From Octopus sinensis (lineage: Eukaryota): 64,000 nucleotides of DNA. This document shows positions 9,395 through 40,495 of this stretch, piece by piece. Under the pieces are notes generated by a model. That model worked only from the letters and a program-made list of their open reading frames with translations, did not search any database and was not told where the DNA came from. Position 1 is the first letter of the stretch, and each line of letters starts with the position of its first letter. The position numbers and the translations under genes are program-made. The stretch covers positions 81,158,001 to 81,222,000 of the forward strand of contig NC_042998.1 in the NCBI RefSeq assembly GCF_006345805.1, read 5' to 3'.

Positions 9395-10090
9395 CAGAAT
9401 GAGATTAAAAAAAAAACAAGGCTTTGAATACTTTTCAGAACATTTATAAAGAGGTCTTACAGCTGTTTCCGGGATATTTTATATATCCCTTCATCAGAGA
9501 CGGTATGAGGAAATGTTTAAGTAATAATTATTGTAGAGAAGATATGAAATACAGAGGGAAGTGAAGGAATGAAAATAGAATTGAGATACGTAAGGATATT
9601 TTATTTGCAGTTCCATTATTTAAGTTTCCTGTACCTTGTGTGTGATTTCCAATGCTGTTCATATTTGGTCATTCCAAGCATAGAATATTGTAAACAGTGT
9701 TATTTGATCGAGGGTTTTTTTTGAGTGACTTAAAAATTGGGAATTTGTTTGTAAGGTCAAATCAGACAGGAAAAGACAAAAAAGAAGAAAAGGGGGAAGA
9801 GAGACAATAAAAAGAGAAAAAAGAGGTGTTTTAGCTAGTGGTCAGGATAAAATGATAGAAAGTAGGGGGAGGTGAGGGAGGGAGAGAGAGAGAGAGAGAG
9901 AGAGGGTAAAGAGTGAAAGAGTGTGAGGTATATTAGCAGGAGTGTTGTGACATAGCTGCATTAAGGGATGGGTAAAGAAAGTGCAGAGAGAAAGTAAGGG
10001 TCGGATGATGTGTAAGTGGGAATTAGTTTTGGTAATAAACTTCAGGTGGAATATATAGTGAAGTTCCTAGAATAGACTGGTTAGTAGAGA
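9390..10090 (-). mobile_element. Penelope-type non-autonomous repeat containing a hammerhead motif; boundaries approximate
   Basis: HHR at 9454-9501 next to (CT)n(TA)n. The right boundary is uncertain. Confidence 0.5.
9454..9501 (-). ncRNA. Minimal type I hammerhead ribozyme, canonical core
   Basis: Minus strand: GTCT-CTGATGA-A-GGGATAT ataaa ATATCCC-G-GAAA-CAGCTG-T-A-AGAC. Helix III is the palindrome ACAGCTGT and the site is GUA. Confidence 0.75.
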
Positions 10091-10362
10091 AGAAATAAAG
10101 AATTTATATTTGTGAAAATGAATACACACATACACGTATCCACACATGTATATAGACATATACATGCATCAACATATATATATACGCATACAAACTCTGA
10201 TATGTTCACACGCATTCACGCCTATAGACACTCATTCGTATCTATTTTGTATATATAAATTCTTGTAAATAAAAAAAATGCATGGAGACTCATACTCGCG
10301 CATAAATGTATGTAAGTGTATATATACACGTACATACCCACCCAGGCGGGTATGTGCACACA

Positions 10363-10420
<58 letters not shown>

Positions 10421-10713
10421 CTACACATACTCATATACAAATCCACGCTTATATAAAATATCTATACCTATACTCGTATATGCTCACCTGTACCCGCTTG
10501 CATGCTCATATATGCATACATACACACGTATATACACACATACATTTATACATGTACATATATACACACGCATATATACACACACATATATAACGCATAC
10601 ATACACATACACCTATATACACAAACCCATACATACGTGTATCCATATGTATTATCATATCTGTATGTATATGTACATACACCACGCATACATACATACG
10701 TACACACACACAC

Positions 10714-10764
<51 letters not shown>

Positions 10765-10790
10765 TATATATATATATATTATATATATAT

Positions 10791-10821
<31 letters not shown>

Positions 10822-10828
10822 TTGTATA

Positions 10829-12210
10829 TATTTGTCGACCTCACAAAAGCATTTGAAACAGTAAGCAGCACAGGACTATGGCTCATCCTGGAACGACCTG
10901 GCTGTCCCACTAATTTTCTACAGATGGTGATCCAGCTACACGAGAACCAGCGTGGCCAGATCAGACTCCACGGTGACCTGTCGGAGCCCGTCCCCATCTC
11001 TAACGGCGTGAAGCAGGGTTGTGTCCTGGCACCGACTCTCTTCAGCATCTTTTTCAGCATGATTCTCAAGCATGCAACTGAAGATCTGGAGGTTGGGGAT
11101 GAGGTGTATGTCAGGTAGCGTCTGGATGGCAGTCTCTTCAATCTACGGCGCATCGAAGCCCACACCAAGACCCAGGAGAAGCTGATCTGAGACCTTCTTT
11201 TCGCGGACGAAGTTGCTCTCGTCGCCCACACAGAGCGACCTCTGCAGTGCATCACGTCCTGCTTTGTGGACGCCACGCGACTCTTTGGTATGGAGGTCAA
11301 CCTCAAGAAGACGGAGGTACTTCACCAGCCTGCACCCAAAGCAGTATACCTTCTACCCCAGATTACCATCTGAGGTACCGAACTGAAATCAACACAGCAG
11401 TTCTCATACCCGGGATGCATCATCTCATTCGATGCAAGGTTCGACAAGGAAATTGACAATAGACTCTCTAAGGCAAATAGCTCCTTTGGCAGATTGTACG
11501 AACATGTTTAGCACAAGAATAACTTGAAGAACAAGACAAGGATCATCGTCTACAGGGCCGTGTTTCTCACCACTCTCCTTTACGGCTCGGAGGCCTGGGT
11601 CACCTGTCGCAGTCACATTCGTCTCCTCGAGCGCTTCCACCAGCGATGTCTCCGCACCACCCCCAACATTCACTGGAGTGACTTCGTCACAAACATTGAA
11701 GTTTTGGAGCAGACCGAGATCTCCAGCATTGAAGCCATGCTACTGAAGTACCACCTCTGATGGGCAGGGCTTGTTTCCAAAATGGAGAACCATCGCCTTC
11801 CTAAGATTGCCCTGTTTGGCGAACCCTCCATCGGCCGCTGTGAGAGTGGAACCCCAGGGAAAGGCTACAAAGACTGCCTCAAAAAGTCTTTCACCGCATG
11901 TCATGTTGACCACCAATGCTGGGCAGACCTGGCTGCGGACCGTGATGCTTAGCGCCACACGATCTTCAACGCGGTCAACGAGTTTGAAGAACACAAAAGA
12001 GACGCACATAAAGACAAGAGACGTAGGAGGAAGGCCCAAGCCGCCTCTGACACCACACCGGATGGACACTGCTGTGGACTCTGCTCACGGACCTGCCTTT
12101 CCCGCTCGGACTTGTCAGTCATGAGCGTGCCTGCAGACGATGTGGACAACCTTCCTAATTTTCGTTCACGAAGCCAAGCCATGATGATGACAATGATGAT
12201 GATGATGATG
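10829..12210 (+). mobile_element. 5'-truncated RTE-clade LINE: RT domain to 3' end with (GAT)n tail, several stops
   Basis: FVDLTKAFETV, GVKQGCVLAPTLFSIFF, LLFADE, LLYGSEAW, LERFHQRCLR, then an ATGATG tail. Confidence 0.92.
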
Positions 12211-12277
<67 letters not shown>

Positions 12278-12419
12278 ATATATATATAGTTATATAATTA
12301 AATGATTGTGATCCTAAAGTAAGAAAAGAGGAGTTAGATAAGGATTAGAAATTAAAATGGATATTTATAAGGTTGTTAGGGATTACCTATGGAGTATTGT
12401 GGAAATTATATATATATAA

Positions 12420-12620
12420 TTTTTAGTTTGGGCACAAGACCTGTAATTATGGAGGATGAAGCTACTCGATTATCTCGACCCCTCTACTCAACTGATATTT
12501 ATTTTATCGATCATCGAAGAATGAAAGCCAATGTTGATCTCGGCGGCATTTGAACGCAAAGCTTAAAATTAGACGAAATGCCGTTAAACGCTTCGTCCGG
12601 GGTGATAACGATTCTGCCAA
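12420..12620 (-). mobile_element. SINE family B, decayed
   Basis: GATCTCGGCGGCATTTGAAC, with the rest similar to the reverse complement of family B. Confidence 0.65.
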
Positions 12621-12773
12621 TGTCACTTCTTTTCGCTATCCCTAGGACTTCAGTTTACACACACACACACACATGCACATCACAGCTGTATGTGTGTGTT
12701 TGTGTGTTCGCTTGTGTTCGTGTGCTCGTTTGTGTTTGCTGCTGTTATGTGTGCGTGTGTGTGTCTGCGCGCG

Positions 12774-12819
<46 letters not shown>

Positions 12820-13433
12820 TGTGTGTGTGTGTGCGTGCGTGCGTGCTGTGTGTGTAATTTATTGCTGATTTATTTATTTATTTTTCTTTTGCCTTCGTAG
12901 AAAATAAAACAATTTTTCTAAGAAACATTCGTTCACTGAAGCAGAAAGAAAATACTTCTCGTCGATATTCGATGGCTTTTACCACAAACTGTTTTCTGAA
13001 CCACGCCGAAATAATAGTCCATCCATTTACACATGTGCAACATAATAATTACAGAAAAGGGTAAACAGGAGAATTGTGTTGTTGTGTGCTGTTCATGCTT
13101 CACTTTATCTTTGAAGAATGGAAACCGAATGTTAAATATCGATTCTGACATCAGAATGAAGGAATTATTCAGAGCTAAGGAATCGGAACGAAACGAATAC
13201 TATTCTACGGCGCCAAGCTAAAATGTGATGTTTATTGTGAAATTGTCACGTGTTTTGGGATTGCATTAAGTTATATATTAAACCTGTTTGTTACAGAAAG
13301 TCGATAGAAATCACTGCGTAAAAACAGAAATATAACTGAGGTTAAATATGGGTCTACGTGAAATGAAACTAATTGAAAGAGGTAGATGTAATTGATACGA
13401 AACAAAATATTATAATGATCGTTACATGATGTG

Positions 13434-13471
<38 letters not shown>

Positions 13472-13729
13472 TTACAGCTATGAAGTTATTGATGCGAAAT
13501 GTTTTCATTGGTGTGTATATTGTGGATTCAATTTATAGCATCTGGAACTTGTCAACACCGCTATATTATTGCACTTGCTTGACAGAAATGATGTTGGAGA
13601 GGGAATTTTCGAAAGATAAATTGCCTCAAATATTGACTGCTGCTTCTTTTATCAACATTGAAACGAGACACGGTACACTGTTCTAATGATTCATTCGTCT
13701 TTTTAATAACGATATTGATTTAAAATTTT

Positions 13730-14070
13730 GACATAAGGCCAGCAAGTTCTGGGGAGAGAGTAAGTTGATTATATAGGCTCCAGTGCGGCGCTCAGTTTGA
13801 GCTCAGAGTTTAAAGGCGGACGAAGTGAAGTTAAGCATTTTGCTTGGCGTGCTTACGATTCTACCAGCTCGTCGCCTTCTCGCCTTTCCATCGTAATAAT
13901 ATTAGTATTAATAATAATAAACCTTTCTATTATAGGCACAAGGCCTGATATTTGGGATTACATTGACTGGTACTTATTTTATCAATCCAGAAAGTCGACC
14001 ACGGTGAAATTTGAGCTCAGAACGAAATGACGATAGGTATTTTGCCCGTCGCACATACGATTGTAGCTGT
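13730..14070 (-). mobile_element. Two adjacent decayed SINE family B pieces
   Basis: ..TACCAGCTCGTCGCC head remnant and AAAGTCGACCACGGTGAAATTTGAGCTCAGAAC. Confidence 0.6.
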
Positions 14071-14079
14071 TAGCCGGCT

Positions 14080-14140
<61 letters not shown>

Positions 14141-14287
14141 GGTGAGGATGATGAGGAATATGAGGATAATGATATCTTTTATTTGCCAATGGGGCATCTT
14201 ATGAGAGACATTATGGTAGTTTATAATTTCTTTGAAAGCTTGCATAAAGTATGAAGGATGTAAGTTAAAGGAGTAAAAAGTATACAT

Positions 14288-14650
14288 TAGTCGTAGGAGT
14301 GGCTGTGTGGTAAGTAGCTTGCTTACGAACCACATGGTTCCAGGTTCAGTCCTACTGCGTGGCACCTTGGGCAAGTGTTTTCTACTATAGTCTCGGGCCG
14401 ACCAAAGCCTTGTGAATGGATTTGGTAGACGGAAACTGAAAGAAGCCCGTCGTATATATGTATATATATATGTGTATGTTTGTGTGTTGTGTTTATCCCC
14501 CAAGATCGCTTGACAATCGATGCTGGTGTGTTTACGTCCCCGTAACTTAGCGGTTCGGCAAAAAAGACCGGTAGAATAAGTACTAGGCTTACAAAGAATA
14601 AGTCCTGGGGTCGATTTGCTCGACTAAAGGCGGTGCTCCAGCATGGAGCA
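14288..14650 (+). mobile_element. SINE family A, well-preserved copy
   Basis: GTAGGAGTGGCTGTGTGGTAAGTAGCTTGCTTAC...GGCGGTGCTCCAGCATGG. Confidence 0.9.
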
Positions 14651-15600
14651 GTCAGACATAAGCAGACACTAACCTCAATACACCATCTTCGTTGCTCTTC
14701 TGGTCCAGCACGGCGAACTTACTATCTGAATCCACCTATCTGTTTTGGAGAAGGAAGCTAGCTACAATTATTTTGAGAAATACTTACCACTTACGCCACT
14801 GGAGTAACAATACTGAAAAATATTTCTTGATTTACGTCACAAACAAATGGAAATATATAATATAACAACAATAATATAAAGATCACATAATGAATTTACT
14901 TGATTACTACATGCTATCGAATCATGAATAAAATAACGGAAAGAACTGTAAGCATATCATATGTCTTAACAAGATAACATCTAATAATGACAACAATCTT
15001 GTCTATTTTTTCTATATCTTTCAATGAAATCTATTCGAGCCATGATCTTTTAAAAAAGCGTACTCGTTATAAAAATGAAGGCCACAAGGAAGAGGTATTT
15101 TTTCTCTCAATAAATACTATGACAAAACGTGATGTACCGATGTATATGTACTTGTAGTTCAGAATGTGGCATTTTGAATTGTATAAATAGAATTAAGAAC
15201 TTTTGTGCAGTTACCCGAAGCAAAATAGATTTTTCTCCAATAATGGAATTTGTTGTTATTTTAACAAAATTTAACTACATGTTAAAGAAGCCGTGCATGC
15301 GAAGAAAGCAGACTTAATGTTTAGAAGAGCGAAAAGATGATGTTGTTTCCACTGAAATCTCATTAAATTCAAACAAAAAATAATTTCAAAAACTATCGAT
15401 TGTAGAAGCGGTTATATTTGTAGATAATTACCGACGAAAATACGTAAACTAACGGGAACGGAACGTGCTGTTCTTCTTTCTTTGTTTTTTTACAGGAAAC
15501 GTAATGCTTCATACTTTATACATTATATCAGAGATTCTCCAGCATGATATGTGCGTGTGTATGCGTGTGTGTGTGTTGGAAAGAAAGAAAGAAAAGAGAC

Positions 15601-15703
<103 letters not shown>

Positions 15704-17396
15704 GTGAGAGAATTCGTTTCATTAAAAAGAAGCAAAATGGGAACAATATGAAGAAAAATAGTAAACTATTTTCCAAATCTCAATGTGAACAGGACGGAAT
15801 TGTGTATTGGTGAAATATTTTGATGCAAACCGCTAATCATCGTACATATAATTGAGAGTAAAATTGCCATGCCATTTGAGAATCTGGTGGGCAAAGTTTG
15901 TTTTTGCATAATTAAGAATATCGTGAATCTAATAAAATAAAGAAAAATCTTGGATATTCCAATGTCCTCTCCAGTTCCATTTTCCGTTTCGGGAATTGTG
16001 GGAGAGCGTGCTGCTTCAAGAATGCTCAGAACAACCGATATTTACAATAACATAAATTAAACGATAAAAAAAAAACGTGTAAGGAATGAACTTACCAACA
16101 ACGTATATTACATTATCTTTAACACAAGCTGAAAATCTCATTCTCGGTGTAGGCATTGGTGTTCTTTTTCTCCACGTGCCATCTTTAGGATTATAACTGT
16201 ATCATATAATAAATAACAGATTTATGTTAATATTTTACAGTCAAAGTTAAATGTTTATACTTAGGACATTTCAAGTATTACTTTTAGCAATATATCCTTT
16301 CAGTACATCACTTGTTATCAATATAAACATATTGCACATGCATCTGTCTGTATGCAGCAGTTGTATGGCGGCAGTGAGGTGACAAACACACTCGCGTGCA
16401 CACACACAAGCACACACTGACACACACACACACACGCGCACGCACACACACATTTGCCATCTATCAAATTCACTCGAAAGGCTCTGGTCAGCACGGGACT
16501 CTAGAAGAAGACACTTGTCGAAGGAGCTGTGGAGTGAGACTGAACTTGATACTATGTGATAGGAAAGTGATCTTCTTTACTACACAACCATACCTGTGCC
16601 CTCGGGATTGGGTGTTTACCGGCAATTGATAATGTATTTCCTATGCGAGAACCCAAACCTTCATTATTGAGAAAATGAAAAGAAATATTTTGCATATCCG
16701 CGTATATTAGATAACGACAAATTAGTTTATGCATACGTGTGTGCATGTGCGGGCGCGTGTGTGTGTGTGCGTGTGTGAGTGTGTGTGTGTTGGTGAATGT
16801 TTCAGTGTGAGTGTGTGTGGTGTTTTGCGTTGCAGCAAGGAGATTATTTATGACTGCATAGAAGTATCTAAGTTCGATTAGCTACTAATGTCTAATGAAG
16901 CGCATCTAGGCGTGTCGGTGACGTATGTATCTTGTTACTCGTACTGTGATAATCACTGCATAACCACTGCATATATATCTCAATAAGATGTGTTATTTCC
17001 TACGCTTCTGGAATAGGTGGCTATAAAACAACTGTTTTTTCATGGAGGTGGAGTCGTTGGCAGAGAAGGTAAATCGACGGGTGATTATACAAAGTTAGAA
17101 ATCCATGAAAAGCATCAGAGTTTCTGCTGACGATACAAAAAGCATTTAAGATATTCAAGATAAAGTCAAGTCATTAAGCCATGATTTTGTGGGATTAGGT
17201 TTCACTTGAGACATCAATATGCGCACACAGATTTGTATGCCCCGTAAATACTGACCGCTTAGAGGCCTTGTTGATACTAAAATCTCATATATCCGAAGAG
17301 TTCTCATATGTCTAGGTGCACTTAGTAACAAGAGGCTGTGATACATTCGTTAAGCCGATTCAATTCAAATATGCTGTCAATATGTTTTTGTCAAAA

Positions 17397-18390: not shown

Positions 18391-19263
18391 TGGTATTGAT
18401 GGCAAAATGCCCAAAACAGTAAAAAATATTTTAACATGTAAAAATATGCATGAAAATCCGAAAGTTATTTATGCTAAATTATATACAACAATATCGTATT
18501 TGGAAATCTGGTGAATGCCTAATGCGAAATACTTTATTATCCAATATTATTAATTCATTATTTGAACATTTCAATTTCAGGACACAATTTCATTTTGAAA
18601 ATTTACTTGCATGGTTGTGTCAGATTATCAGAGCTGACAAAGAATAATTGTAGTATAATTTGTTTAAGGTTTAAGTTGTTAAAAGGTAAATAATAATTCA
18701 ATTATCGTCTAACAGTTTTCACTAATATTTTTGATTAAGATGACAGTATTTCATTCCCTGAAAATGTTGTAAAACACGTAACAAAATAAATATTTAATAT
18801 TGATTAAAAGTTTGACGTCACGATATCATGGGATTTTTGTGTGGAACGAAATTACTTGGAAGGCTTGTAAATTTTAAATCTATTCATCCATCAAGCTGTT
18901 ATATGCAATGATAAGAGTGGAGTTGAAATAGAAAGCAGATCAACGGGGAATTATAACGGTTTACAAATCTTGCAGTTGCAGCAGATTTGACAGGGGAGCA
19001 TGCATAATGCAGATTAGCGTTTGAAGTAGAAACTGGCAGAAAGAGAAAGTAAAAATTCATATCGCGGTAGGGAATCGTGATCTTGCGATAATGAACACGT
19101 CAAATAATGATATAGTTCGTTTACCTGCTAACACCCTTGATGATACCATAGTTAACTATACATGGGGTATAATATTTGAAAACTAAAAGAAGAAAAGACC
19201 CACAGAAGTATAAAACAATGCTGAATACAAAGATGAGTCATTAATTATCTACAATGCACTTAC

Positions 19264-28811: not shown

Positions 28812-29263
28812 TGTAGGTATGTACATACATGTATGTATAGATATACATGTATGTATGTATGTATGTATGTATGTATGTATGTATACAACATGTGCTCATA
28901 CTTATATTCATACATGCAGACAGTTACAGAGGACTCTATACTCAATTTTATTTATGAAGATCAACTGTCATATTTGTGAGAATTATGAGGACTAAACCTT
29001 CTTATACTCCCTATTAGAGCAACAATATATCTAAATATTCCAGTAACAATAATATATCTAAATATTCCATAACAATAATATATCTAAATATTCCAGATAG
29101 ATTCTTTACGAAAATTGTAACGAGTTTAAATTTATCATAACTTCATACAAATTTCCTTTCGTATTTTATTCATTCCATTAGTAAAACACCAAACAGAGGA
29201 AATGAGATTTTTTTCTTTTTCGTTTTTCTTTTTTATTTTTCTGAATGTCAGAAAGAAATTTAC

Positions 29264-29495
29264 CATAACAGCCGACCTGTACATATTGCAGCGTTTTTTC
29301 GGTATCCTCCAATGATATACAGCACATTGTTAACAACAGCAATTTCGAAGTTGACGACATTAGAAGTTTGTTCCCAGCGCACTGTGTTGAGTGGTTTATA
29401 GGCGATTTGATCAATATCGTTATTCAGGGTCATGTAATGGACGTCTCCCGATCCTGATTTATCGAAAAGATATAAAATGTCTTCCTCTTTGGTGT
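29264..29495 (-). CDS. Internal coding exon of a Kelch-repeat protein
   Basis: Open frame (D)TKEEDILYLFD...FEIAVVNNVLYIIGGYRKNAAICTGRLL, with a Kelch hydrophobic-GG-Y motif. Acceptor TTTCAG, donor GTAAAT, 232 bp, phase 1 to 2. Confidence 0.8.
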
Positions 29496-29586
29496 CTGAA
29501 AGCATAAAAATATATTACATAGAAATATTATATGTATGATATAGATTTTCAAAACGAAATCATGTGATTGCACACACACGCACGCG

Positions 29587-29666
<80 letters not shown>

Positions 29667-29689
29667 TACATAATGTACCCTGCACTTGC

Positions 29690-29872
29690 TTACACTGGTA
29701 CTCCGTCGGTTACGACGATGAGTGTTCCAGTTGAGCCGTTCAGCCGAACAACCTGCTCGTGAAATTAACATGCAAGTGGCTGAGCACTCCACAGACACAG
29801 CACGCCGACGGGAATCGAACTCATGACCTTATGATCGTAAACCGAATATACCTAATCAGTAAGCTACGCACC
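29690..29872 (-). mobile_element. SINE family C, internally deleted
   Basis: Core joined directly to the GGGAATCGAACTCATGACC head. Confidence 0.75.
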
Positions 29873-29966
29873 CTGGCTTTTATACACGCAGACACGGGGA
29901 CCGACACTAACACATACGACACTAACACAAACGAATAAGCTTCTTACTACACAGCCACGCCTGCGC

Positions 29967-30005
<39 letters not shown>

Positions 30006-30171
30006 ATAGTTATCGCCATACTAATATGGCATTCTTATAAAAATAAGAAAAAAGCTGTCCGCTTATTAGCTCCATGAGGCCATCGCCTTAAGTTAGCTAT
30101 TTGATACACAAACTGTATCCATATAACCTTCGAACAAGGGAGGTCAGTCGCTCCACACTACTTGACCGGCA

Positions 30172-30213
30172 GCTACAGACGCGTTTCGGAGTATTGCCCC
30201 TTTTCAATGCAGC
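30172..30213 (-). ncRNA. Variant minimal hammerhead ribozyme (U3-A8 core)
   Basis: Minus strand: GCTGCA-TTGAAAA-GGGG caata CTCC-GAAA-CGCG-T-C-TGTAGC. Confidence 0.8.
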
Positions 30214-30574
30214 GTAGCCAGCCAGTAGGTGTCGCTTCCGACAATCTCTGTTCGATGGTTTTATTTACCTAGTTTCGGTGGAATACATCCACTTGTTTTC
30301 AATAATAGAAATATTAAAATAACTAAGTCTCTCTAAAAGAGAACAGCGGCAGCGTTCCCGGAAAATAATAGTTTTATTTACCTAGTTTCGGTGGAATACA
30401 TCCAGTATGGCGATAACTATTATTTTCCGGGAACGCTGCCGCTGTTCTCTTTTAGAGAGACTTAGTTATTTTAATATTTCTATTATTGAAAACAAGTGGA
30501 TGTATTCCACCAAAACTAGGTAAATAAAACCATCGAACAGAGATTGTCGGAAGCGACACCTACTGGCTGGCTAC

Positions 30575-30616
30575 GCTGCATTGAAAAGGGGCAATAATCC
30601 GAAACGCGTCTGTAGC
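30575..30616 (+). ncRNA. Variant minimal hammerhead ribozyme; predicted cleavage after 30610
   Basis: Same motif. C>A at 30597 weakens the outer pair of helix II. Confidence 0.75.
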
Positions 30617-31144
30617 TGCCGGTCAAGTAGTGTGGAGCGACTGACCTCCCTTGTTCGAAGGTTATATGGATACAGTTTGTGTATCAAATAGCTAACTTAA
30701 GGCGATGGCCTCATGGAGCTAATAAGCGGACAGCTTTTTTCTTATTTTTATAAGAATGCCATATTAGTATGGCGATAACTATTATTTTCCGGGAACGCTG
30801 CCGCTGTTCTCTTTTAGAGAGACTTAGTTATTTTAATATTTCTATTATTGAAAACAAGTGGATGTATTCCACCGAAACTAGGTAAATAAAACCATCGAAC
30901 AGAGATTGTCGGAAGCGACACCTACTGATTTTTCCTTGGATTACGTCGGATTATTTTACGCTGTAAGCTGTTATGTTAGTTCGTTCTGTTCTGGATTTAC
31001 ACGTACAATTTTTGGAGTATTAACTTGTGAAACAAAGTAATTTTCGCCCTTCGGGGTAGAAAATTTCTTTTTATATATGAACTTTAATTCAGTGTGGATT
31101 TGATTTTTATCTTGTCTCTTGTGACAAGTCACTTGCATTTTATT

Positions 31145-32620
31145 ATGGATCTTGACTTAACGTCAAATTCTGATTTTCCCGAGATGGGAGAAGTTATAAA
31201 GCAAAAGGATACAAAGGAGAAACAAAGTTTTTCGGAAGCCGTTGGAGGCAATGTTATAGAACTGGAAGTAACAATGGAGGATCTCTTCAAGTTCAGAAAG
31301 TTCATACAAAGGAATGGAGAAGAAACGAGAATAATACCGCCCCCTGACACCTTACAAGCAATCCGTGAGAAGACGTTAATTATAAGGTATATAATATTAA
31401 GGAAAAAAAGATTGCAGATGTAAGAAATGAATTGGTAGAACGGTGCATGGCACCAATTTGGAACAAGGTTCGCTATGTTGGCCGAGGAGTGAGAAGCGCT
31501 ACTATTGAAGCGCATTTCGAGTCGGCTAGCATAGCGAAGGAATTTCAACTCAAACGTTGAAGAGTGCAGACATCCTGTTGCTGCCCACGTACTTAGGGCG
31601 CAGAACAGCTAAGATAACAATAGAGGATATACCAACAGGTTACGATGTAATGTGTGCAGCAACAGCGGTCGTATTCGACGTAGAAGAGAAATTAAACATT
31701 TTAAACATGAGGATGAAAGAGGCAAAATTTTGGAAAGGTCAGCAGCTTGAAATGATCGTTCAAGCTGACAATGCAACGCTGGAGAGTTTGCCAGACAGGG
31801 TCTTCGTGGGGGATGGACACACTGCGCGGGTATCGGTGGAGGGACGTAGGCCCAGATGTTTCAAATGTGGGCAGAAGGGTCACGTCCGCTCAGAGTGCAA
31901 AAAGAAAAAACCCGTTAATGCCCCCATTCAAACCGCTGTGGAGAACAAAGCAGACATCACAGCAACAACAAAAGAGAATACCCGGAAAAAGCAAAATGAA
32001 AGTCAAAAGGAGGAAAAGAAAATGAATGGAAAACAAAGCGAAAACGAAAACGAGGTGAAAATATTTTATCAAATGGAAAAGAACTGGAAGTAATGGAATA
32101 TACGACTGTAACCAACAAAAGGAAGAAATCCAATACCCCGGACTCCCCACCCCAAACAAAAAGAAAAACAAACGCAGAACAACACAAAAAAATTATCCAA
32201 TCCCACCCCGCTGGCACTACTTTTGTAGGCCAGCATTTCATTAAACCCCAGTCCCCAACTTTAAAAGGATTCAAAAAAACCGATAGGTGCATTGCTTATA
32301 ACACAAAAAACGAGAGAGTAGTTTGGTACATAAAGGCGAAACCAAACATAAAATGTTTCAAATCATCGGAAAAAAACCCGGATTGGAGGTATGCGAAGGT
32401 TGGAGAGGAGGAATGGAAGGAGAGACTCTTCCAACTACACGTGAGGGACAACCTGATTAAAGATGTCACACAAGAGGTGATAGCTGGAAAATTGAATATT
32501 AGCCCGGCAGCCACTCCATCCCAGAGCCCGGTGGCAACGCCGGTTAAATGCCCAGCAACAACGGAGAGTGTGGGGGAAGCAGGCAGACAAAAGCTGCCAT
32601 GCTCCCTCTCACAACCGTAA
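31145..32620 (+). pseudogene. Tx1 ORF1 (gag-like, CX2CX4HX4C zinc knuckle), split by three frameshifts
   Basis: MDLDLTSNS...LLLPTYLGRR...RPRCFKCGQKGHVRSEC. The fragments join by single-base restorations at about 31387, 31545 and 32077. Confidence 0.85.
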
Positions 32621-32644
32621 GTAACAAACTTTCTTCATTCATCG

Positions 32645-35600
32645 ATGATTAAGTTGGGCTGTATAAATGTGCGTGGAATGGGGTCGAAATGGAAACAGGC
32701 TTGCTTGCTGGACGACCTCAGGACACACAGAATAGATGTAGCCATTGTCACCGAGTCCAAGATGAGAGGAACCCAAGCGTTCTCGCATCTTCTCAATGGT
32801 TACGAGAAATTTATTTCTCCTAGCCGAGGAGGAAGTGCAGGCGTGGCAGTCCTTATCAGGAAGAACTTGGACTTACAGGTAAGTACTGTCTTTATGGACC
32901 CAGAAGGTAGGCTGGTTGTCCTCGATGTAACTCACGTAAGTAAGCAGTCCTTCAGGTTGGTAGCTGTTTATGCTCCTAATGAGGGTAGGCAGACTGGTTT
33001 TTATCGGAACTTGGAGCACTTTCTAGTGACGTCTAAAACGGTAGTATTGGTAGGGGATTTCAACACTATCATCGATGCGCGGATAGATAGTGTGGGCTCG
33101 TCTGATAGAAGGGGGAATCCTTGCCTTAAGGGTCTACTGACGAGCTTTAATCTAGTAGATCGGTTTCGAATGGATGAGCCGAGCATTCCACAGTGGACGT
33201 GGAGTAACAATGACGGCTCACGCAGATCGTATATAGATAGGGTATTTGTTAAAGAACGAGATAGGAATAGCATTAGCTGTCCACAATTTTGTATTGTGCC
33301 TTACACGGATCACAAATTAGTGACGTGTGAGGTACATGTAGATAAATGCCATAGACAGGGACCCGGATACTGGAAAATGAACAAGTCTATTTTGGCTTGT
33401 GAAGCTTTCCGTAACCGGATTATGGAATTAGTCCAGAGGGCATTATGTGGAACCATCATTAATAATAGATGGTGGATCGCCCTCAAAAGAGCCATCCGTT
33501 TGGAGTCCATTAGATTTAGCAACCAGCTAAGTTTAGATAGGACTAGAATAGAGGGCGATTTAGTTAAGAACTTAGACGAGGCAATGGGATCTGGCTGTGC
33601 ACCTAGAGTGTTAGCAGAGAGAACGATCTTGTACCGTCACCTCAATGCCAAGCATGAAGGATGTAGAGTCAGAGCTAAGCTACGTGCAGTGAAACGAGAA
33701 GGTATTAATGTTGCCGGATGGGCACGTCGTGTGGAGAGTCAGAAGGGCAAAAAGTCCTCTATTAAGTCTTTAACTGACGAACAGGGACGCAAAATCTATG
33801 GACAGGAGGAGATACAGAAGGTCTTTCAAAAGCATTTCGCTCGGTTGTTTGGGGAGGGCGATCCACTCGAGCGAGGGGAGGACTTACAGAACTTCCTAGC
33901 TGGTGGGCCTCGGCTCTCGCCAAGCAGAGCGGAACGCTGTGAAGGACCGATTACTCCCGCGGAGGTAAGAGGGGTTTTGGCTGAATGCGCCCGGGAAAAG
34001 TCGCCGGGACTGGATGGTCTGCCCTATGAGTTTTATTGTTGTATGCCGGACTTGTTCGGGGACATACTGGCAAGCGTCTACGCAAACTGGCAACAGAATG
34101 GGAGGATTCCCAGTTCTGTGAGCCGGGGAGTTGTGACGCTGATCCAGAAAGACCCGAGCAAGGGGGATAATATTAGTAATTATAGGCCCATAACTCTACT
34201 TAATGTAGAGTTAAAGATTTTGGCCTAGGTGTTAGCAGAAAGGTTGAAGGTCGTCATGGAAAAACTTGTCGGAAAGGCACAGACATGTGCAATCCCAGGC
34301 AGGTCGATCGAAGATAATCTTCACCTTCTACGCTACACTATAGACAGGGTTGGGCAATTAGCCGGCAAAGGAGGGGCATTGGTCCATTTAGACCAAAGTA
34401 AAGCATTTGATAGGGTAGATCATCAGTACCTGGCGACGGTTCTCGAAGCGGCTGGGCTAGGTCCTGACTTTCGCGGGTGGATATCAGCTATGTACAGCGG
34501 TATCAAGTCCACAGTCCAGATAAACGGTTACTTAACGGAACCGTTTTCGATTAAGCGTTCAGTTCGTCAAGGATGTCCCTTGTCCCCTCTCCTGTACGTT
34601 TTGGCTCTTGAGCCATTGCTGCGGAAGTTGGAGACGGTGAGATGCAATCCTAATGAAATCGGATGCGGTAAGTCTGTTTCTGCGTATGCGGATGACGTCA
34701 CCTTCATCGTGTCCAACGAAGCACAACTAACTCGTGTAGAAGGTGCTCTCCGAAGATACGAAGCGGTGGCTGGGGCAAAAGTTAACAAGGACAAGTCCAC
34801 TGGTTTGCGCCTCGGCACCTGGAGGAACAAGCCGATATCGTCCAGTGTTGTTGGACACTGGACAGATGGTCCTGTTAAATTGCTTGGAGTTTGGTTTGGT
34901 TCAGACTCCCAGACGGAGAAAAATTGGAGCGAGGTAGTGACCAAGGTAGAAGCCATAGTTCGGGAGTGGTCCGGAAGGCATCTTTCCTTGAAAGGGAGGG
35001 CGGAGGTGGTACAGGTGTTATAGCATCTGTAATCACCTATCGCCTGACTGTCGTGCCTTGCCCCGATTTGTGGCTAAGCAAGTTGGATCGACTCCTTTTC
35101 CGCTTTTTGTGGAAGGGAGGAAAGCCACTTGTAAGGCGCTCCGTGTGTTGCCAGGAACCACTAAAGGGTGGGCTGGGGATGCCTTGGTTAATGATGCGCA
35201 GGCATGCGCTGAGACTGAGACATCTCTGGTTTCACCTGGAAGGTGATAAGGTGTGGAGTCCGCTGGCAGATAATTTCTTCCCGCAACCGGACTCTATGGA
35301 GAGATTTAAACCCGGTTTCATTAAAAGACGGAACCTGACTTTATGGCAGAAAGAGTGCCGACAGGCACTCTGGCTGATCCACAAGATAGGCAAAGCCGGC
35401 TGCGGGAATACCACCTCGACATTTTATAGAAGGATGGTAGAGGCAAAAAATGACGACGTCCTAAGAGGGGCTCTGGGGTTCGATGAGGATCAACTATCCG
35501 ACCTGTTTAAGAAGACTTTCAAGCCGGGGTATTTGGACAATTACCAAAAATCCCTGACTTGGCAGTGCTATAGGAATGCTCTACCTGTTCGCGATAAGTT

Positions 35601-36020
35601 ATATAGGCATGGAATGTCAGTGCCACCGACATGTCCAAGATGTGGGTTGGACGATGAAACCGTCCAGCACGCTTTTGTACATTGTCAGGAGCTGTCAGGC
35701 TTAATAAGTTACGTAGAACACGTGTTGCCGCATCTGGGACGAGTACAGCTATCGGCTGGTTCTATAATAAAGATGATACCGCCAGCTGGACTCTCAAAGG
35801 AAGGTGAGGCTTGTTTTCACTGTACGGTGGCAGTACTGAAAGAGTGTGTGTGGAGAACTAGATTGGAAGGTTTGGTGTCAGGATCATTGTCTCTGGATAT
35901 GGTATGTTAAAATACTTCAGATACCATCTAAAGAGCAAGATGGATTTAGAGAAGAGGAACCTGACACAGAAAAAGTATGTGAATCGATGGAAGGATGTGA
36001 TAAAAAAAGGCGGGTGTGAG
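32645..36020 (+). pseudogene. Tx1 ORF2: AP endonuclease, reverse transcriptase and C-terminal CCHC
   Basis: INVRG, LVGDFN, SYIDRVF, TDHK, KSPGLDG, YRPITLLN, DQSKAFDRV, VRQGCPLSPLLY, YADD, CPRC..DETVQHAFVHC. In-frame TAG at 34226-34228 and frameshifts near 35018 and 35890. Confidence 0.93.
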
Positions 36021-36277
36021 TAACCCTGCTTGGTCATCATGAAGGGAGAAAATAGTCTCTGGGCTCTTAGGCTGTCGGGTAAGAATCCTGACTGTGATAT
36101 ACCTAGCTGGCCAAAATCATTTTTAATTTTAAAAAAAAGGAGAAAAGTAAAGTCTAGTATCATAATCAATAATCAACATATGTAAATATCAAACGAACAA
36201 CGTAAACTTTTTGTAATTATGTTTTGTATTGTAATGTACTATCTCTGTAAGATTTTTATAATCATAATAAAGATTTA

Positions 36278-36577
36278 GGAAGCGACACCTACTGGCTGGC
36301 TACGCTGCATTGAAAAGGGGCAATACTCCGAAACGCGTCTGTAGCTGCCGGCCAAGTAGTGTGGAGCGACTGACCTCCCTTGTTCGAAGGTTATATGGAT
36401 ACAGTTTGTGTATCAAATAGCTAACTTAAGGCGATGGCCTCATGGAGCTAATAAGCGGACAGCTTTTTTCTTATTTTTATAAGAATGCCATATTAGTATG
36501 GCGATAACTATTATTTTCCGGGAACGCTGCCGCTGTTCTCTTTTAGAGAGACTTAGTTATTTTAATATTTCTATTAT
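36278..36577 (+). repeat. Continuation of the 362-bp HHR tandem array after the Tx1 insertion, ending in (TA)n
   Basis: The sequence resumes in register with the unit. Confidence 0.95.
36304..36345 (+). ncRNA. Variant minimal hammerhead ribozyme; predicted cleavage after 36339
   Basis: GCTGCA-TTGAAAA-GGGG caata CTCC-GAAA-CGCG-TC-TGTAGC with an extended helix I. Confidence 0.8.
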
Positions 36578-36590
36578 ATATTATATATAT

Positions 36591-36621
<31 letters not shown>

Positions 36622-37234
36622 GTATGTATGTGTATGCATGTATGTGTATGTATGTATGTGTGTGTATAGACGTACATACATACTTAGATACATATACATA
36701 TATATTGGTGAGAGTGAGTCTACGCGCATCTGATGTGCGCAAATGTGACTGTGTGACGTATATACGCACATCTGTTCATACTTATTTAATTGTTAATTAA
36801 ACCATTTGTTTCAATGGATCCGAAGATAGACGAACAAGATACGTTCACGATAATAAATGTCGACACTAAAACGGTACACGATTTTACTATAAAACTGATG
36901 TCGGTGTGTTGCGGGAAAATATCCGACATTTTTTTTTGTGACGCAAATCTTTCGTAATATGCCGGATTTTCTTGTCAACCAAATCGTTCATTTGGAGACA
37001 AATGTCTTGCGCTCAAAGACGTCACAACTAGTATATGTCTAATACAATAACAGAACCAATATAATTCGTATGACTAAAATTTACATGATTTTTTTGTGCC
37101 ATTCTAATTTCCTTTCTGAGATTTGCTTTAAAACGAAAGCTAATGTAATATCCTAACACTGTCTTTATCACCAACTCCCCCCAAAAGAAAAAGAACAAAC
37201 ATAATAGTTTTAAGAACATTAGTGAAATTATGTG

Positions 37235-39470: not shown

Positions 39471-40495
39471 TCACTTGTGCCCGCATATACCGCCATTATC
39501 CACTCGTATCACGGGCAATGTTATGGCCTCCACAGCTATCTGCAGAGGCCATTCGGGTTCCCGTGTGAAAGTTAAAGGTATTCCCTTATAGTGTTTTTCT
39601 ACCACCTTTCCTACCTCTCCACCTCTATAGAAGAAAATCAATAATTTGTCTTCCTCCGGGGTTGAGGTAACCAATTCTACCATTGGCGGTACAATTCACG
39701 CCAACGGTGTCTCTCCCTCTGCCGGTGGCAAAACAGACGAGGTTACAGCTTCCTCTGTCGGTGCCACGATTCCCACCGAAGAGGCCTCGGGACATGCCGG
39801 CAGTACACTGCATACCTCCAGCACTGTTTTCTTTTCCTTCCGGAGGAGAAGGGGGAGGGGGTTCTTCCGCAACTAACTGTTCCAGGACGCTGCTCTGGTC
39901 CTTGGGACAGTTCCTCTTAATGTGGCCAGGCTCCAGGCACTGATGACACTTGGGGGTGGTGGCTCCATCAAGAATCACCGGATACCTGGACCCGGCCATC
40001 CTCAAAAAGTCTATGAACACCAGATCATTGGCTGACTGGGTCCACAGGGTCAAAACTGCTTTTGACTCCACCCAATCAGCCGCATGGCATCATTTTAACA
40101 TTCAAGATCTTAGCTACGCTGCCACCCAGACACCAGCGGATAGTGTCCTCTCTCCACTCGGGTTCTATTCCGGGTGGCAGTCCACGCACCCAAACTCTTG
40201 TCAATTTCCTCCCACGATATGTGGGCAGAAACAGAATTTTCTCCCCTTCCAGGGCCTGGCTCGATATAAAATGCGAGCCTCCTTAAGGGTATCAAATAGC
40301 AACCACACTGTTGCATATTTGAACCCTTGCAATAAACTTGATGTTTGGCAGGTATTCCGCCAACTCCTTCTCAATATCTACTTGAGAGAACACAGTGATG
40401 GTGTCGAGGGACTTGGAATATTTCCTCAACACCACCGTTCTCTCATTAAGGTCCTTTATCCACTGATGGGGTGGGGGGGGGGCACATTTTCCCAC
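39471..40495 (-). pseudogene. Tx1-type ORF1 with zinc knuckle, frameshifted
   Basis: PPPHQWIKDLNERTVVLRKY (cf. PPPDTLQAIREKTLIIRY), LFLPTYRGRK (cf. LLLPTYLGRR), PKCHQCLEPGHIKRNCP. Confidence 0.8.

What the first reader, a model, noticed from the sequence alone, without database searches (positions are those of the whole stretch)
30575..36345. Tx1 LINE inserted into a hammerhead-ribozyme array and bracketed by two same-strand ribozymes
Seen: a 5350-bp Tx1-clade LINE with a perfect 17-bp TSD (GGAAGCGACACCTACTG) sits inside a 362-bp HHR repeat. The TSD overlaps the distal 5' arm of HHR helix I, so the duplication rebuilds a complete ribozyme right after the LINE, with cleavage predicted 62 nt past its 3' end (36339). 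Another ribozyme lies 317 nt before its 5' end (30610), and both are on the LINE sense strand. 36339-30610 = 5729 = 362+5350+17. Known: Tx1-clade elements are often target-specific for multicopy sequences (U2 snRNA, tRNA arrays, other transposons), and R2 uses its own HDV-like ribozyme to release itself from co-transcripts. Inference: this family may target ribozyme repeats and use the host array's transcription and cleavage to release a unit-length RNA of about 5.7 kb. The lack of a poly(A) tail (it ends AATAAAGATTTA) would fit. I know of no description of a ribozyme-array-targeting Tx1, but could not search.
Basis: partly seen in the sequence, partly recalled or inferred. Interest (0 to 1): 0.9.

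Follow-up and report, generated by a model that had tools for sequence, protein, structure and literature searches.

The report
LINE nested in a hammerhead retrozyme
A broken L1/Tx1-type jumping gene has landed inside a small ribozyme-carrying repeat element (a "retrozyme") in a cephalopod genome. The two ribozymes on either side of it follow automatically from landing in a tandem repeat, and nothing found here shows that the LINE aims at them or uses them.

Summary
A 5,350-bp LINE (30928-36277; ORF1 with a CCHC knuckle; ORF2 with APE, RT and zf-RVT) is flanked by a perfect 17-bp TSD and splits one unit of a 362-bp repeat. Removing it restores an exact 362-bp unit.

The repeat carries a hammerhead-shaped motif at three sites. 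It has helix I of 6 bp, helix II of 4 bp and a palindromic helix III (ACGCGU). Its core is U3-A8 instead of C3-G8, so Rfam does not detect it. That variant is documented in Penelope-like-element (PLE) hammerheads. A 77%-identical copy in Octopus sinensis keeps the core and shows compensatory changes.

The "array" is only about 1.2 kb: 2.2 direct units plus one inverted arm, set in a (TA)n microsatellite. That is the layout of a PLE-type non-LTR retrozyme insertion.

The functional inference (the LINE targets ribozyme repeats and uses their cleavage) has no support here. Only one copy could be reached. The LINE has one nonsense codon and three frameshifts, and it carries its own conserved AATAAA 3' end. 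The ribozymes are of the dimer-dependent type, and the insertion moved the two same-strand copies 5.7 kb apart. The genome is very repeat-rich, so a chance nested insertion is the likeliest reading. The decisive test is a genome-wide tabulation of junctions, which I could not run.

The parts
29966..30001 (.). (TA)n microsatellite, left flank of the whole composite insertion
   Evidence: sequence read directly
30002..30373 (-). Inverted arm of the retrozyme. It covers unit positions 12-362 then 1-21 in minus orientation and ends against (TA)n.
   Evidence: inverted repeat I1: 372 nt, 99% complementary to 30415-30786; (2 mismatches to unit A)
30172..30213 (-). Hammerhead-like motif (U3-A8 core) of the inverted arm
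30368..30404 (-). 37-nt fragment (reverse complement of unit 94-130) at the head-to-head junction. It resembles the 30-40-bp 'tail' described for PLE insertions.
   Evidence: (D4, I5, I6); PMC8557442 read
30404..30765 (+). Complete 362-bp retrozyme unit A
   Evidence: (D3, spacing 362)
30575..30616 (+). Hammerhead-like motif of unit A, with predicted cleavage after 30610. Helix II is weakened by a C-to-A change at 30597.
30766..30927 (+). Unit B, left part (unit 1-162), ending in the left TSD copy (30911-30927)
30928..36277 (+). L1/Tx1-type non-LTR retrotransposon, 5,350 bp, full length but degenerate. There is no poly(A) tail; it ends ...AATAAAGATTTA.
31145..32620 (+). LINE ORF1 (CCHC zinc knuckle), interrupted by two frameshifts (about 31420-31530 and about 32000-32090, near A-runs)
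32645..35910 (+). LINE ORF2 (APE, RT, zf-RVT), with a TAG nonsense codon at 34226-34228 and a frameshift at about 34880-35020
36266..36271 (+). AATAAA signal within the family-conserved 3' end motif AATAAAGA
36278..36494 (+). Unit B, right part (unit 146-362), starting with the right TSD copy (36278-36294)
36304..36345 (+). Hammerhead-like motif downstream of the LINE, with predicted cleavage after 36339
36495..36577 (+). Partial unit C (unit 1-83), ending against (TA)n
36578..36625 (.). (TA)n microsatellite, right flank of the composite insertion; it continues as (TATG)n

Best explanation
There were two successive, independent retrotransposition events.

(1) A small non-autonomous element of the 'non-LTR retrozyme' / Penelope-like-element (PLE) kind inserted into a (TA)n microsatellite. 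Its unit is 362 bp, 41% GC, and carries a type-I hammerhead with a U3-A8 core and a palindromic helix III that needs two copies to pair. It inserted as a typical PLE-style block of about 1.2 kb: one inverted arm head-to-head with 2.2 direct units.

(2) Soon afterwards a 5,350-bp L1/Tx1-type LINE inserted into unit positions 146-162 of the second direct unit. This was ordinary target-primed reverse transcription with nicks staggered by 17 bp, which duplicated GGAAGCGACACCTACTG.

Because the target was a tandem repeat, a ribozyme motif necessarily lies on the same strand one unit-remainder upstream (317 nt) and downstream (62 nt). That geometry is a by-product of the insertion.

Shown: the boundaries, the TSD, the empty-site reconstruction, the motif architecture and its conservation in O. 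sinensis, and the broken ORFs.

Inferred: the order of events, PLE-type mobilisation of the repeat, that the hammerhead is active, and that the LINE landed there opportunistically in a genome that is about two-thirds repeats.
For: - TSD and exact 362-bp empty-site reconstruction.
- LINE domains: zf-CCHC, Exo_endo_phos, RVT_1, zf-RVT. The best solved-structure match is human L1 ORF2p, E=3e-27 across APE and RT.
- Repeat layout: a 372-nt inverted arm at 99%, a direct spacing of 362, (TA)n on both sides, and a 37-nt junction piece. [quoted passage not shown]
- Unit size and GC fit metazoan non-LTR retrozymes: 150-450 bp, 350-390 bp in mussel, under 45% GC (PMC7229834).
- The hammerhead architecture equals the 'canonical metazoan' one: helix I 6 bp, helix II 4 bp, helix III 1-2 bp with a palindromic 2-4-nt loop. 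The U3-A8 covariation is a described natural variant (PMC4209133).
- Descriptor scan: 3 hits in the window against 0 in 100 random sequences.
- The O. sinensis copy (L003 13650-14210, 77% identical, also head-to-head and in microsatellite) keeps U3, A8, GAAA and GUC. It changes G-U to G-C in helix II and changes loop 3 from GC to UA, which keeps the palindrome.
- The circular unit RNA folds at -118.9 kcal/mol, z=-6.6. Two motifs co-fold with an intermolecular ACGCGU helix.
- The window holds other LINE remnants outside any ribozyme repeat. O. vulgaris is about 66% repeats, with 421 recent L1-Tx1 insertions averaging about 5.4 kb (PMC13282606).
Against: - Only one copy of this LINE family could be examined, so chance cannot be formally separated from target preference.
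- The bottom-strand nick site (5'-GCTTCC/GACAAT-3') is not the A/T-rich L1 consensus, and the element has no poly(A) tail. Both are more typical of sequence-specific or 'stringent' LINEs.
- Self-cleavage of the U3-A8 motif is untested, and Rfam models do not recognise it.
- No autonomous PLE sharing sequence with the 362-bp unit was found, and none was searched for genome-wide.
Confidence: 0.75

Rival explanations
1. The LINE family is target-specific for this retrozyme. Its endonuclease recognises the sequence around unit 146-162, as other Tx1-clade elements recognise U2, 5S or tRNA genes, microsatellites or other transposons. It makes no use of the ribozymes.
For: - The nick site is not L1-like, the 17-bp TSD is clean, and there is no poly(A) tail.
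- In the Argonauta hians locus, two LINE relatives that are only 67-70% identical to each other are each followed by (TCTA)n and the same 158-bp sequence at 98.7% identity. That hints at non-random placement among relatives.
Against: - Only a single junction is available.
- Three other identical 17-mers occur in the window. Two are independent intact target sites in the same locus (30223-30239 on the minus strand, 30549-30565), and both are unoccupied.
- The nearest relative (O. sinensis, 78.7% nt) is a fragment that is not adjacent to unit 146-162. The retrozyme copy 3.3 kb away lacks that site.
- Another ORF1-like remnant in the window (about 39.6-40.3 kb) is not in a ribozyme repeat.
- The retrozyme occupies about 2% of this window, so chance hits are expected genome-wide.
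Confidence: 0.12
2. One reading: the LINE both targets the ribozyme repeat and depends on the flanking hammerheads and the repeat's transcription to produce a unit-length RNA of about 5.7 kb. This would be analogous to R2 and its HDV-like ribozyme.
For: - Both flanking motifs are on the LINE sense strand, and the downstream one is intact with its distal helix I restored by the TSD.
- There is no poly(A) tail.
- A 62-nt 3' extension homologous to the target could in principle anneal to the nicked target, as read-through sequence does for some site-specific LINEs (inference from established knowledge).
Against: - Same-strand flanking follows automatically from inserting into a direct repeat.
- Helix III is 2 bp plus a 2-nt palindromic loop. 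That type of hammerhead is inactive or weak as a monomer and works as a dimer of neighbouring copies (PMC4209133). The insertion moved the partners from 362 nt to 5.7 kb apart, and the upstream motif carries a helix II mismatch.
- The MFE fold of the monomer does not form helix III.
- The LINE has its own AATAAA at 36266-36271, inside a 3' motif conserved in relatives from three other assemblies. Normal 3' processing would therefore occur before the ribozyme core.
- No ribozyme is detected inside the LINE.
- This copy has one nonsense codon and three frameshifts.
- No paper in the library links Tx1 with hammerheads or retrozymes.
Confidence: 0.04
3. The hammerhead-like motif is a catalytically dead relic or a look-alike. 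On this reading the 362-bp repeat is simply a short PLE-derived or SINE-like repeat with no ribozyme function.
For: - Rfam hammerhead models give no hit even at E<=10.
- C3 and G8 are both replaced.
- PLE-type minimal hammerheads showed only low activity in vitro (PMC4209133).
- Only two lineages (this window and O. sinensis) are available for covariation.
Against: - All other core positions and all three helices are in exact register, with 0 chance hits in 6.4 Mb of random sequence.
- U3-A8 is a compensated pair, reported as a natural covariation with about 1,300 hits in S. mansoni.
- Between the window and O. sinensis, the five differences from U3 to C17 all avoid conserved core positions. 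They include a G-U to G-C change and a palindrome-preserving GC-to-UA change.
Confidence: 0.2

Closest known systems
Metazoan non-LTR retrozymes (Cervera & de la Pena 2020, PMC7229834; Li et al. 2026 preprint 10.64898/2026.07.22.740005)
   Same: A short tandem unit of a few hundred bp (362 bp here; 350-390 bp in mussel) with low GC (41%). One type-I hammerhead per unit, with a short palindromic helix III. The unit RNA is predicted to be highly structured.
   Different: The core is U3-A8 rather than C3-G8. There are only about 3 units, with a head-to-head inverted arm. The host is a cephalopod. Expression as circRNA is not shown.
Hammerheads in the pseudo-LTRs of Penelope-like elements, including the U3-A8 variant of Schistosoma mansoni Cercyon (Cervera & de la Pena 2014, PMC4209133), and the PLE insertion architecture (Craig et al. 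2021, PMC8557442)
   Same: U3-A8 covariation and a dimer-type palindromic helix III. Partial tandem plus an inverted 5'-truncated copy, a 30-40-bp extra piece, and insertion into a (TA)n microsatellite.
   Different: No PLE reverse transcriptase or GIY-YIG ORF is attached, and no PLE with a homologous pLTR was identified. Helices I and II here are of the 'canonical' rather than the 'minimal' form.
Target-specific Tx1-clade LINEs (Tx1L in Tx1D of Xenopus; Keno, Kibi, Koshi, Dewa, Mutsu; named from established knowledge, not re-read here)
   Same: L1-like ORF2 (APE, RT, C-terminal zinc-binding domain) and ORF1 with a CCHC knuckle. The element sits inside another repetitive element, with a long clean TSD and no poly(A).
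   Different: Target specificity is defined by recurrence of the same junction, and here there is a single junction. Clade placement by RT phylogeny was not done.
R2 and other LINEs that are processed from co-transcripts by an HDV-like ribozyme
   Same: The idea that a LINE RNA could be cut out of a longer transcript by a self-cleaving ribozyme.
   Different: In R2 the ribozyme is part of the element and cuts at its 5' junction. Here the ribozymes belong to the surrounding repeat, lie 317 nt upstream and 62 nt downstream, are hammerheads of the dimer-dependent type, and no ribozyme is detected within the LINE.

Membership tests
Hammerhead ribozyme, type I (metazoan canonical form) | Three helices around the core in the correct order and spacing: helix I about 6 bp, helix II about 4 bp closed by G10.1-C11.1, and a short helix III | tested here: met
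   GCUGCA/UGUAGC, GGGG/CUCC and AC-GC-GU. The descriptor gives 3 hits against 0 in 100 random 64-kb sequences. Helices I and II appear in the MFE fold.
Hammerhead ribozyme, type I (metazoan canonical form) | Conserved core C3 U4 G5 A6 N7 G8 A9 ... G12 A13 A14 ... A15.1-U16.1 H17 | tested here: inconclusive
   All positions are present except C3 and G8, which are U and A (UUGAAAA). This is a compensated pair reported as a natural variant (PMC4209133), but it is not the strict consensus.
Hammerhead ribozyme, type I (metazoan canonical form) | Match to the Rfam hammerhead covariance models | tested here: not met
   No hammerhead hit at gathering score or at E<=10 on 29500-37000.
Hammerhead ribozyme, type I (metazoan canonical form) | Conservation and compensatory change in relatives | tested here: met
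   The O. sinensis copy keeps the core. Helix II changes G-U to G-C, and loop 3 changes GC to UA, keeping ACNNGU palindromic. Only two lineages are available, so support is modest.
Hammerhead ribozyme, type I (metazoan canonical form) | Site-specific self-cleavage | not testable with these tools
   Needs in vitro transcription of dimeric constructs or RNA end mapping.
Non-LTR retrozyme / non-autonomous PLE derivative | Tandem unit of 150-450 bp with one type-I hammerhead per unit and GC below 45% | tested here: met
   362-bp spacing, one motif per unit, GC 0.41.
Non-LTR retrozyme / non-autonomous PLE derivative | PLE-style insertion: partial tandem, adjacent inverted 5'-truncated copy, microsatellite target | tested here: met
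   for the window. The same head-to-head layout within microsatellite occurs in O. sinensis. The description was read.
Non-LTR retrozyme / non-autonomous PLE derivative | Sequence homology of the unit to the pLTR of an autonomous PLE | not tested
Non-LTR retrozyme / non-autonomous PLE derivative | Expression as unit-length linear and circular RNA | not testable with these tools
   Only a prediction is available: the circular unit folds at -118.9 kcal/mol, z=-6.6.
Tx1 clade of L1-like non-LTR retrotransposons | APE endonuclease, RT and a C-terminal zinc-binding domain in ORF2; ORF1 with CCHC knuckle(s) | tested here: met
   Pfam Exo_endo_phos, RVT_1, zf-RVT and zf-CCHC. Human L1 ORF2p is the best PDB match. 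These features are shared with L1 proper.
Tx1 clade of L1-like non-LTR retrotransposons | RT phylogeny placing the element with Tx1 rather than L1 | not testable with these tools
Indirect support: L1-Tx1 is the only L1-like superfamily listed among recently active elements in O. vulgaris, with a mean insertion of about 5.4 kb.
Target-specific LINE | The same target sequence and junction recur in independent copies | not testable with these tools
   There is no second copy in the window. The best relatives are 57-79% identical at protein level and are fragments or short contigs. Metagenome and viral scans for the 3' end and for the ribozyme found nothing.
Ribozyme-processed LINE (R2-like) | A self-cleaving ribozyme encoded by the element at its own 5' end | tested here: not met
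   No ribozyme family is matched within 30928-36277 at E<=10. My descriptor finds motifs only in the flanking repeat.

The most novel reading that the evidence does not exclude
This L1/Tx1 family is site-specific for the distal helix-I arm of a cephalopod hammerhead retrozyme. It relies on the retrozyme's transcription and on the flanking hammerheads to define the ends of its RNA, with the retained target-derived tails guiding re-insertion into other retrozyme copies. In short, an autonomous LINE would be parasitising a ribozyme-bearing non-autonomous element.
Probability: 0.04. Interest if true: 0.85.

Novelty: new member of a known kind. Interest (0 to 1): 0.3.

Why it matters
As it stands this is an ordinary nested transposon insertion, and its main use is descriptive. 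It documents a cephalopod non-LTR retrozyme whose otherwise canonical type-I hammerhead carries the rare U3-A8 core. That core makes it invisible to Rfam-based annotation. It also shows the PLE-style tandem/inverted insertion into (TA)n in two octopod genomes. This supports the view that animal retrozymes are PLE-mobilised, and it suggests that ribozyme censuses based on CUGANGA descriptors under-count them.

If the genome-wide test did show recurrent junctions, this would be the first LINE known to target a ribozyme repeat. It would also be a tractable case of one retroelement exploiting the RNA processing of another.

Tried and rejected
- Rfam at gathering score and at E<=10 gave no hammerhead or other ribozyme. 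The only hits were microRNA-like matches to the (TA/TG)n microsatellite at 36.6 kb, which are artefacts.
- I looked for other copies of the LINE or the repeat unit in the window by blastn and tblastn. There were none of the same family.
- Two protein searches with ORF2 pieces were run to reach other copies. The best hits were 57% identical (APE/RT) and 79% identical (a 150-aa O. sinensis fragment). The source genome itself is evidently not in the collection.
- Six loci were fetched: Argonauta hians, an unnamed NCBI assembly, O. sinensis, two ENA assemblies and Acanthosepion pharaonis. Only O. sinensis holds the repeat unit, and none gives a same-family junction.
- Exact-pattern scans of metagenome contigs (twice) and viral contigs for the ribozyme consensus and for the LINE 3' end returned nothing.
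- I attempted to reach the orthologous (empty) site through a neighbouring Kelch-like exon. There was a single unplaced 80-aa hit and no locus.
- Cluster look-up for names that could settle Tx1 versus L1 returned no names.
- I first folded 30249-30610 as 'one unit'. That stretch spans the head-to-head junction and simply gave the giant hairpin, so I redid it on a properly permuted unit.
- An extra U3-A8 descriptor hit without helix I at L003 17362-17403 lies in AT-rich sequence with no repeat homology and was rejected as chance.
- A young 352-member LINE family in an ENA assembly (about 40% identical) was considered as a proxy test of target specificity. I dropped it as too distant to bear on this family. 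The one locus read shows LINE-in-LINE nesting.
Full report

Yes. The 17-mer GGAAGCGACACCTACTG occurs four times in the window, against 0 expected. Two of these copies, at 30911-30927 and 36278-36294, directly bracket a 5,350-bp insert at 30928-36277.

Aligning the 362-bp repeat unit (30404-30765) to the window shows that the left flank runs to unit position 162 and the right flank restarts at 146. Seventeen bases are therefore duplicated. Joining the flanks in a script gives a unit of exactly 362 bp that differs from its neighbour at 3 positions.

The insert is a non-LTR retrotransposon. ORF1 has a CCHC knuckle. ORF2 has Exo_endo_phos, RVT_1 and zf-RVT domains. Its best solved-structure match is human L1 ORF2p, E=3e-27 across APE and RT.

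**2. Is the repeat a hammerhead repeat?**

Rfam says no. There is no hit at gathering score on the whole window and none at E<=10 on 29500-37000.

Read by hand, the motif is GCUGCA / UUGAAAA / GGGG-CAAUA-CUCC / GAA / AC-GC-GU / C^ / UGUAGC. Every element of a type-I hammerhead is in exact register, except that C3 and G8 are U and A.

A descriptor I wrote allows either core. It finds exactly three sites, all with the U3-A8 core: 30575-30616 (+), 36304-36345 (+) and 30172-30213 (-). It finds none in 100 random 64-kb sequences.

Cervera & de la Pena (PMC4209133) describe the canonical metazoan hammerhead as helix I 6 bp, helix II 4 bp, and helix III 1-2 bp capped by a small palindromic loop, acting as a dimer. 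They report a natural U3-A8 covariation with about 1,300 hits in Schistosoma mansoni. The motif here matches that description point by point: ACGCGU is self-complementary, and two motifs co-fold through it.

It does not form helix III in the monomer.

The minimal motif (unit 172-213) lies entirely 3' of the insertion site. The TSD therefore restores only the distal stem.

**3. Evidence from a relative**

A protein fragment from Octopus sinensis, 79% identical to the RT, led to locus L003. That locus also holds a copy of the 362-bp unit at 77% identity, at 13650-14210.

The copy consists of two head-to-head 5'-truncated arms flanked by microsatellites. Its hammerhead reads UUGAUAA-GGGG-CUAAUA-CCCC-GAAAC-UA-GUC:
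- U3, A8, GAAA and GUC are kept.
- Position 7, which is variable, changes.
- A G-U pair of helix II becomes G-C.
- Loop 3 changes from GC to UA, so ACNNGU stays palindromic.

With only two lineages this is modest support. Even so, it is the pattern expected of a constrained, dimer-forming hammerhead.

In both species the inverted arm ends at about the same unit position (about 17-21) against the microsatellite.

**4. What the 'array' is**

It is not a long host array. The layout is as follows:

| Coordinates | Feature |
|---|---|
| 29966-30001 | (TA)n |
| 30002-30373 | inverted arm |
| 30368-30404 | 37-nt piece (reverse complement of unit 94-130) |
| 30404-30765 | unit A |
| 30766-30927 | unit B, left part |
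| 30928-36277 | LINE |
| 36278-36494 | unit B, right part |
| 36495-36577 | unit C, first 83 bp |
| 36578 onward | (TA)n |

Without the LINE this is 1,209 bp. There are no other copies in 64 kb.

The layout combines a partial tandem, an adjacent inverted copy, a 30-40-bp extra piece and a microsatellite target. That is how Craig et al. describe PLE insertions (PMC8557442).

A unit of 362 bp at 41% GC, with one type-I hammerhead, fits the non-LTR retrozymes (PMC7229834). A 2026 preprint argues that these are non-autonomous PLE derivatives.

The circularly permuted unit RNA folds at -118.9 kcal/mol (z=-6.6).

The three arms differ at only 3 positions in about 1.2 kb. If they arose from one multimeric template, the retrozyme insertion is very young, and the LINE insertion is younger still.

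**5. State of the LINE**

ORF2 starts at ATG 32645; the alignment to L1 ORF2p begins at residue 6.

This copy carries four disabling lesions:
- a TAG codon at 34226-34228, inside the conserved RT segment read as LA*VLA;
- a frameshift at about 34880-35020;
- two frameshifts in ORF1, near A-runs.

Relatives L002 and L005 read straight through the ORF2 positions.

This is four lesions in an element that should have accumulated only about a dozen changes since insertion. I infer that it was copied from an already defective template, or that some of the lesions are assembly errors.

The 3' end (...ATAATAAAGATTTA) shares the motif AATAAAGA with the 3' ends of relatives in A. hians (two copies) and in an ENA assembly. 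This supports the 3' boundary. It also shows that the family carries its own polyadenylation-type signal, at 36266-36271. That signal would direct 3' processing within or just after the TSD, before the ribozyme core.

**6. The functional inference**

I could not test recurrence. The source genome is not in the searchable collections: the best ORF2 relatives are 57% identical. Exact-pattern scans of metagenome and viral contigs found nothing.

What evidence exists leans against targeting or hijacking:
- (a) Bracketing by same-strand ribozymes is automatic for any insertion into a direct repeat.
- (b) The hammerheads are of the dimer-dependent type. The insertion moved the two same-strand copies from 362 nt to 5.7 kb apart. 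The upstream one has a helix II mismatch, and the third is on the other strand.
- (c) The two other intact target sites in this locus are unoccupied.
- (d) The O. sinensis relative is a 1.1-kb fragment that does not abut unit 146-162.
- (e) Other LINE remnants in the window lie outside any ribozyme repeat.
- (f) Octopus genomes are about two-thirds repeats, with hundreds of recent L1-Tx1 insertions of about 5.4 kb (PMC13282606). The retrozyme occupies about 2% of this window, so dozens of such nestings are expected by chance.

Three points favour some specificity:
- the nick site (5'-GCTTCC/GACAAT-3' on the bottom strand) is not the L1 consensus;
- there is no poly(A) tail;
- two diverged relatives in A. 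hians share the same downstream sequence.

My estimates are about 0.12 for target specificity and about 0.04 for the full hijack model.

**7. Comparison with what is known, and verdict**

The repeat is a new member of the non-LTR retrozyme / PLE-hammerhead kind, notable for combining the canonical architecture with the U3-A8 core.

The LINE is an L1/Tx1-type element. Tx1 placement is plausible but untested.

No paper in the library links Tx1 with hammerheads or retrozymes.

The most likely explanation is an ordinary nested insertion.

Noticed in passing
window 30002-30786: The inverted and direct retrozyme arms form a 372-nt, 99%-complementary hairpin with a 41-nt loop. The part that was folded gave -227 kcal/mol. 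Any read-through transcript would be a long perfect dsRNA, a plausible substrate for RNA editing or small-RNA pathways.
   Followed up: partly
window 29262-29499 (minus strand): An open frame preceded by a good splice-acceptor sequence (tttatgctttcag) and ending in a stop codon. It encodes 78 aa with a borderline Kelch motif. An 80-aa database protein is 97% identical. If it is a real terminal exon, the retrozyme and LINE lie just upstream of it on the gene's strand (possibly intronic), and the LINE is antisense to the gene.
   Followed up: partly
window 58988-61038 (+): A second LINE ORF2 remnant (RVT_1 at 2.6e-33, then zf-RVT), only about 30% identical to the first LINE in the RT domain. It is not associated with any hammerhead motif.
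   Followed up: partly
window 10726-11118 (+) and 39625-40276 (-): Further retroelement relics: an RVT_1 fragment, and an ORF1-like piece with a CCHC knuckle that is 39% identical to the LINE's ORF1 over 38 aa. A mariner-type Transposase_1 hit also exists among the ORFs of at least 110 aa, but I did not locate it. The window is transposon-rich.
   Followed up: partly
L001 (Argonauta hians) 12787-12965 and 18859-19074: Two LINE relatives that are only 67-70% identical to each other each end in ...GGCTAATAAAGAAA. Each is followed by a (TCTA)n run and the same 158-bp sequence at 98.7% identity, after which the flanks diverge. This could be a shared target, a small element that inserts into the LINE tails, or gene conversion. 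It is unexplained.
   Followed up: partly
L003 (Octopus sinensis) 13650-14210: A retrozyme copy made of two head-to-head 5'-truncated arms, both broken within or next to the hammerhead. It is flanked by (TA)n/(CA)n on the left and (TG)n/(TA)n on the right. Its inverted arm ends at the same unit position as the one in the window.
   Followed up: yes
window 36583-36779: The Rfam 'evalue' hits to mir-297, mir-466, mir-1277 and similar families fall on both strands of a (TA)n/(TATG)n microsatellite, all far below gathering scores. They are low-complexity artefacts.
   Followed up: yes
L004 (ENA ERZ21867824) 9479-12077 and 12245-16879: This locus shows a 3'-truncated LINE copy immediately followed by a full-length copy that is 97.7% identical to it, which is LINE-in-LINE nesting. 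Ten relatives from ENA contigs, about 40% identical to the window LINE, form one young family (89-99% identical to one another; one 90%-identity cluster has 352 members). I did not check whether they come from the same assembly or the same family as L004.
   Followed up: partly
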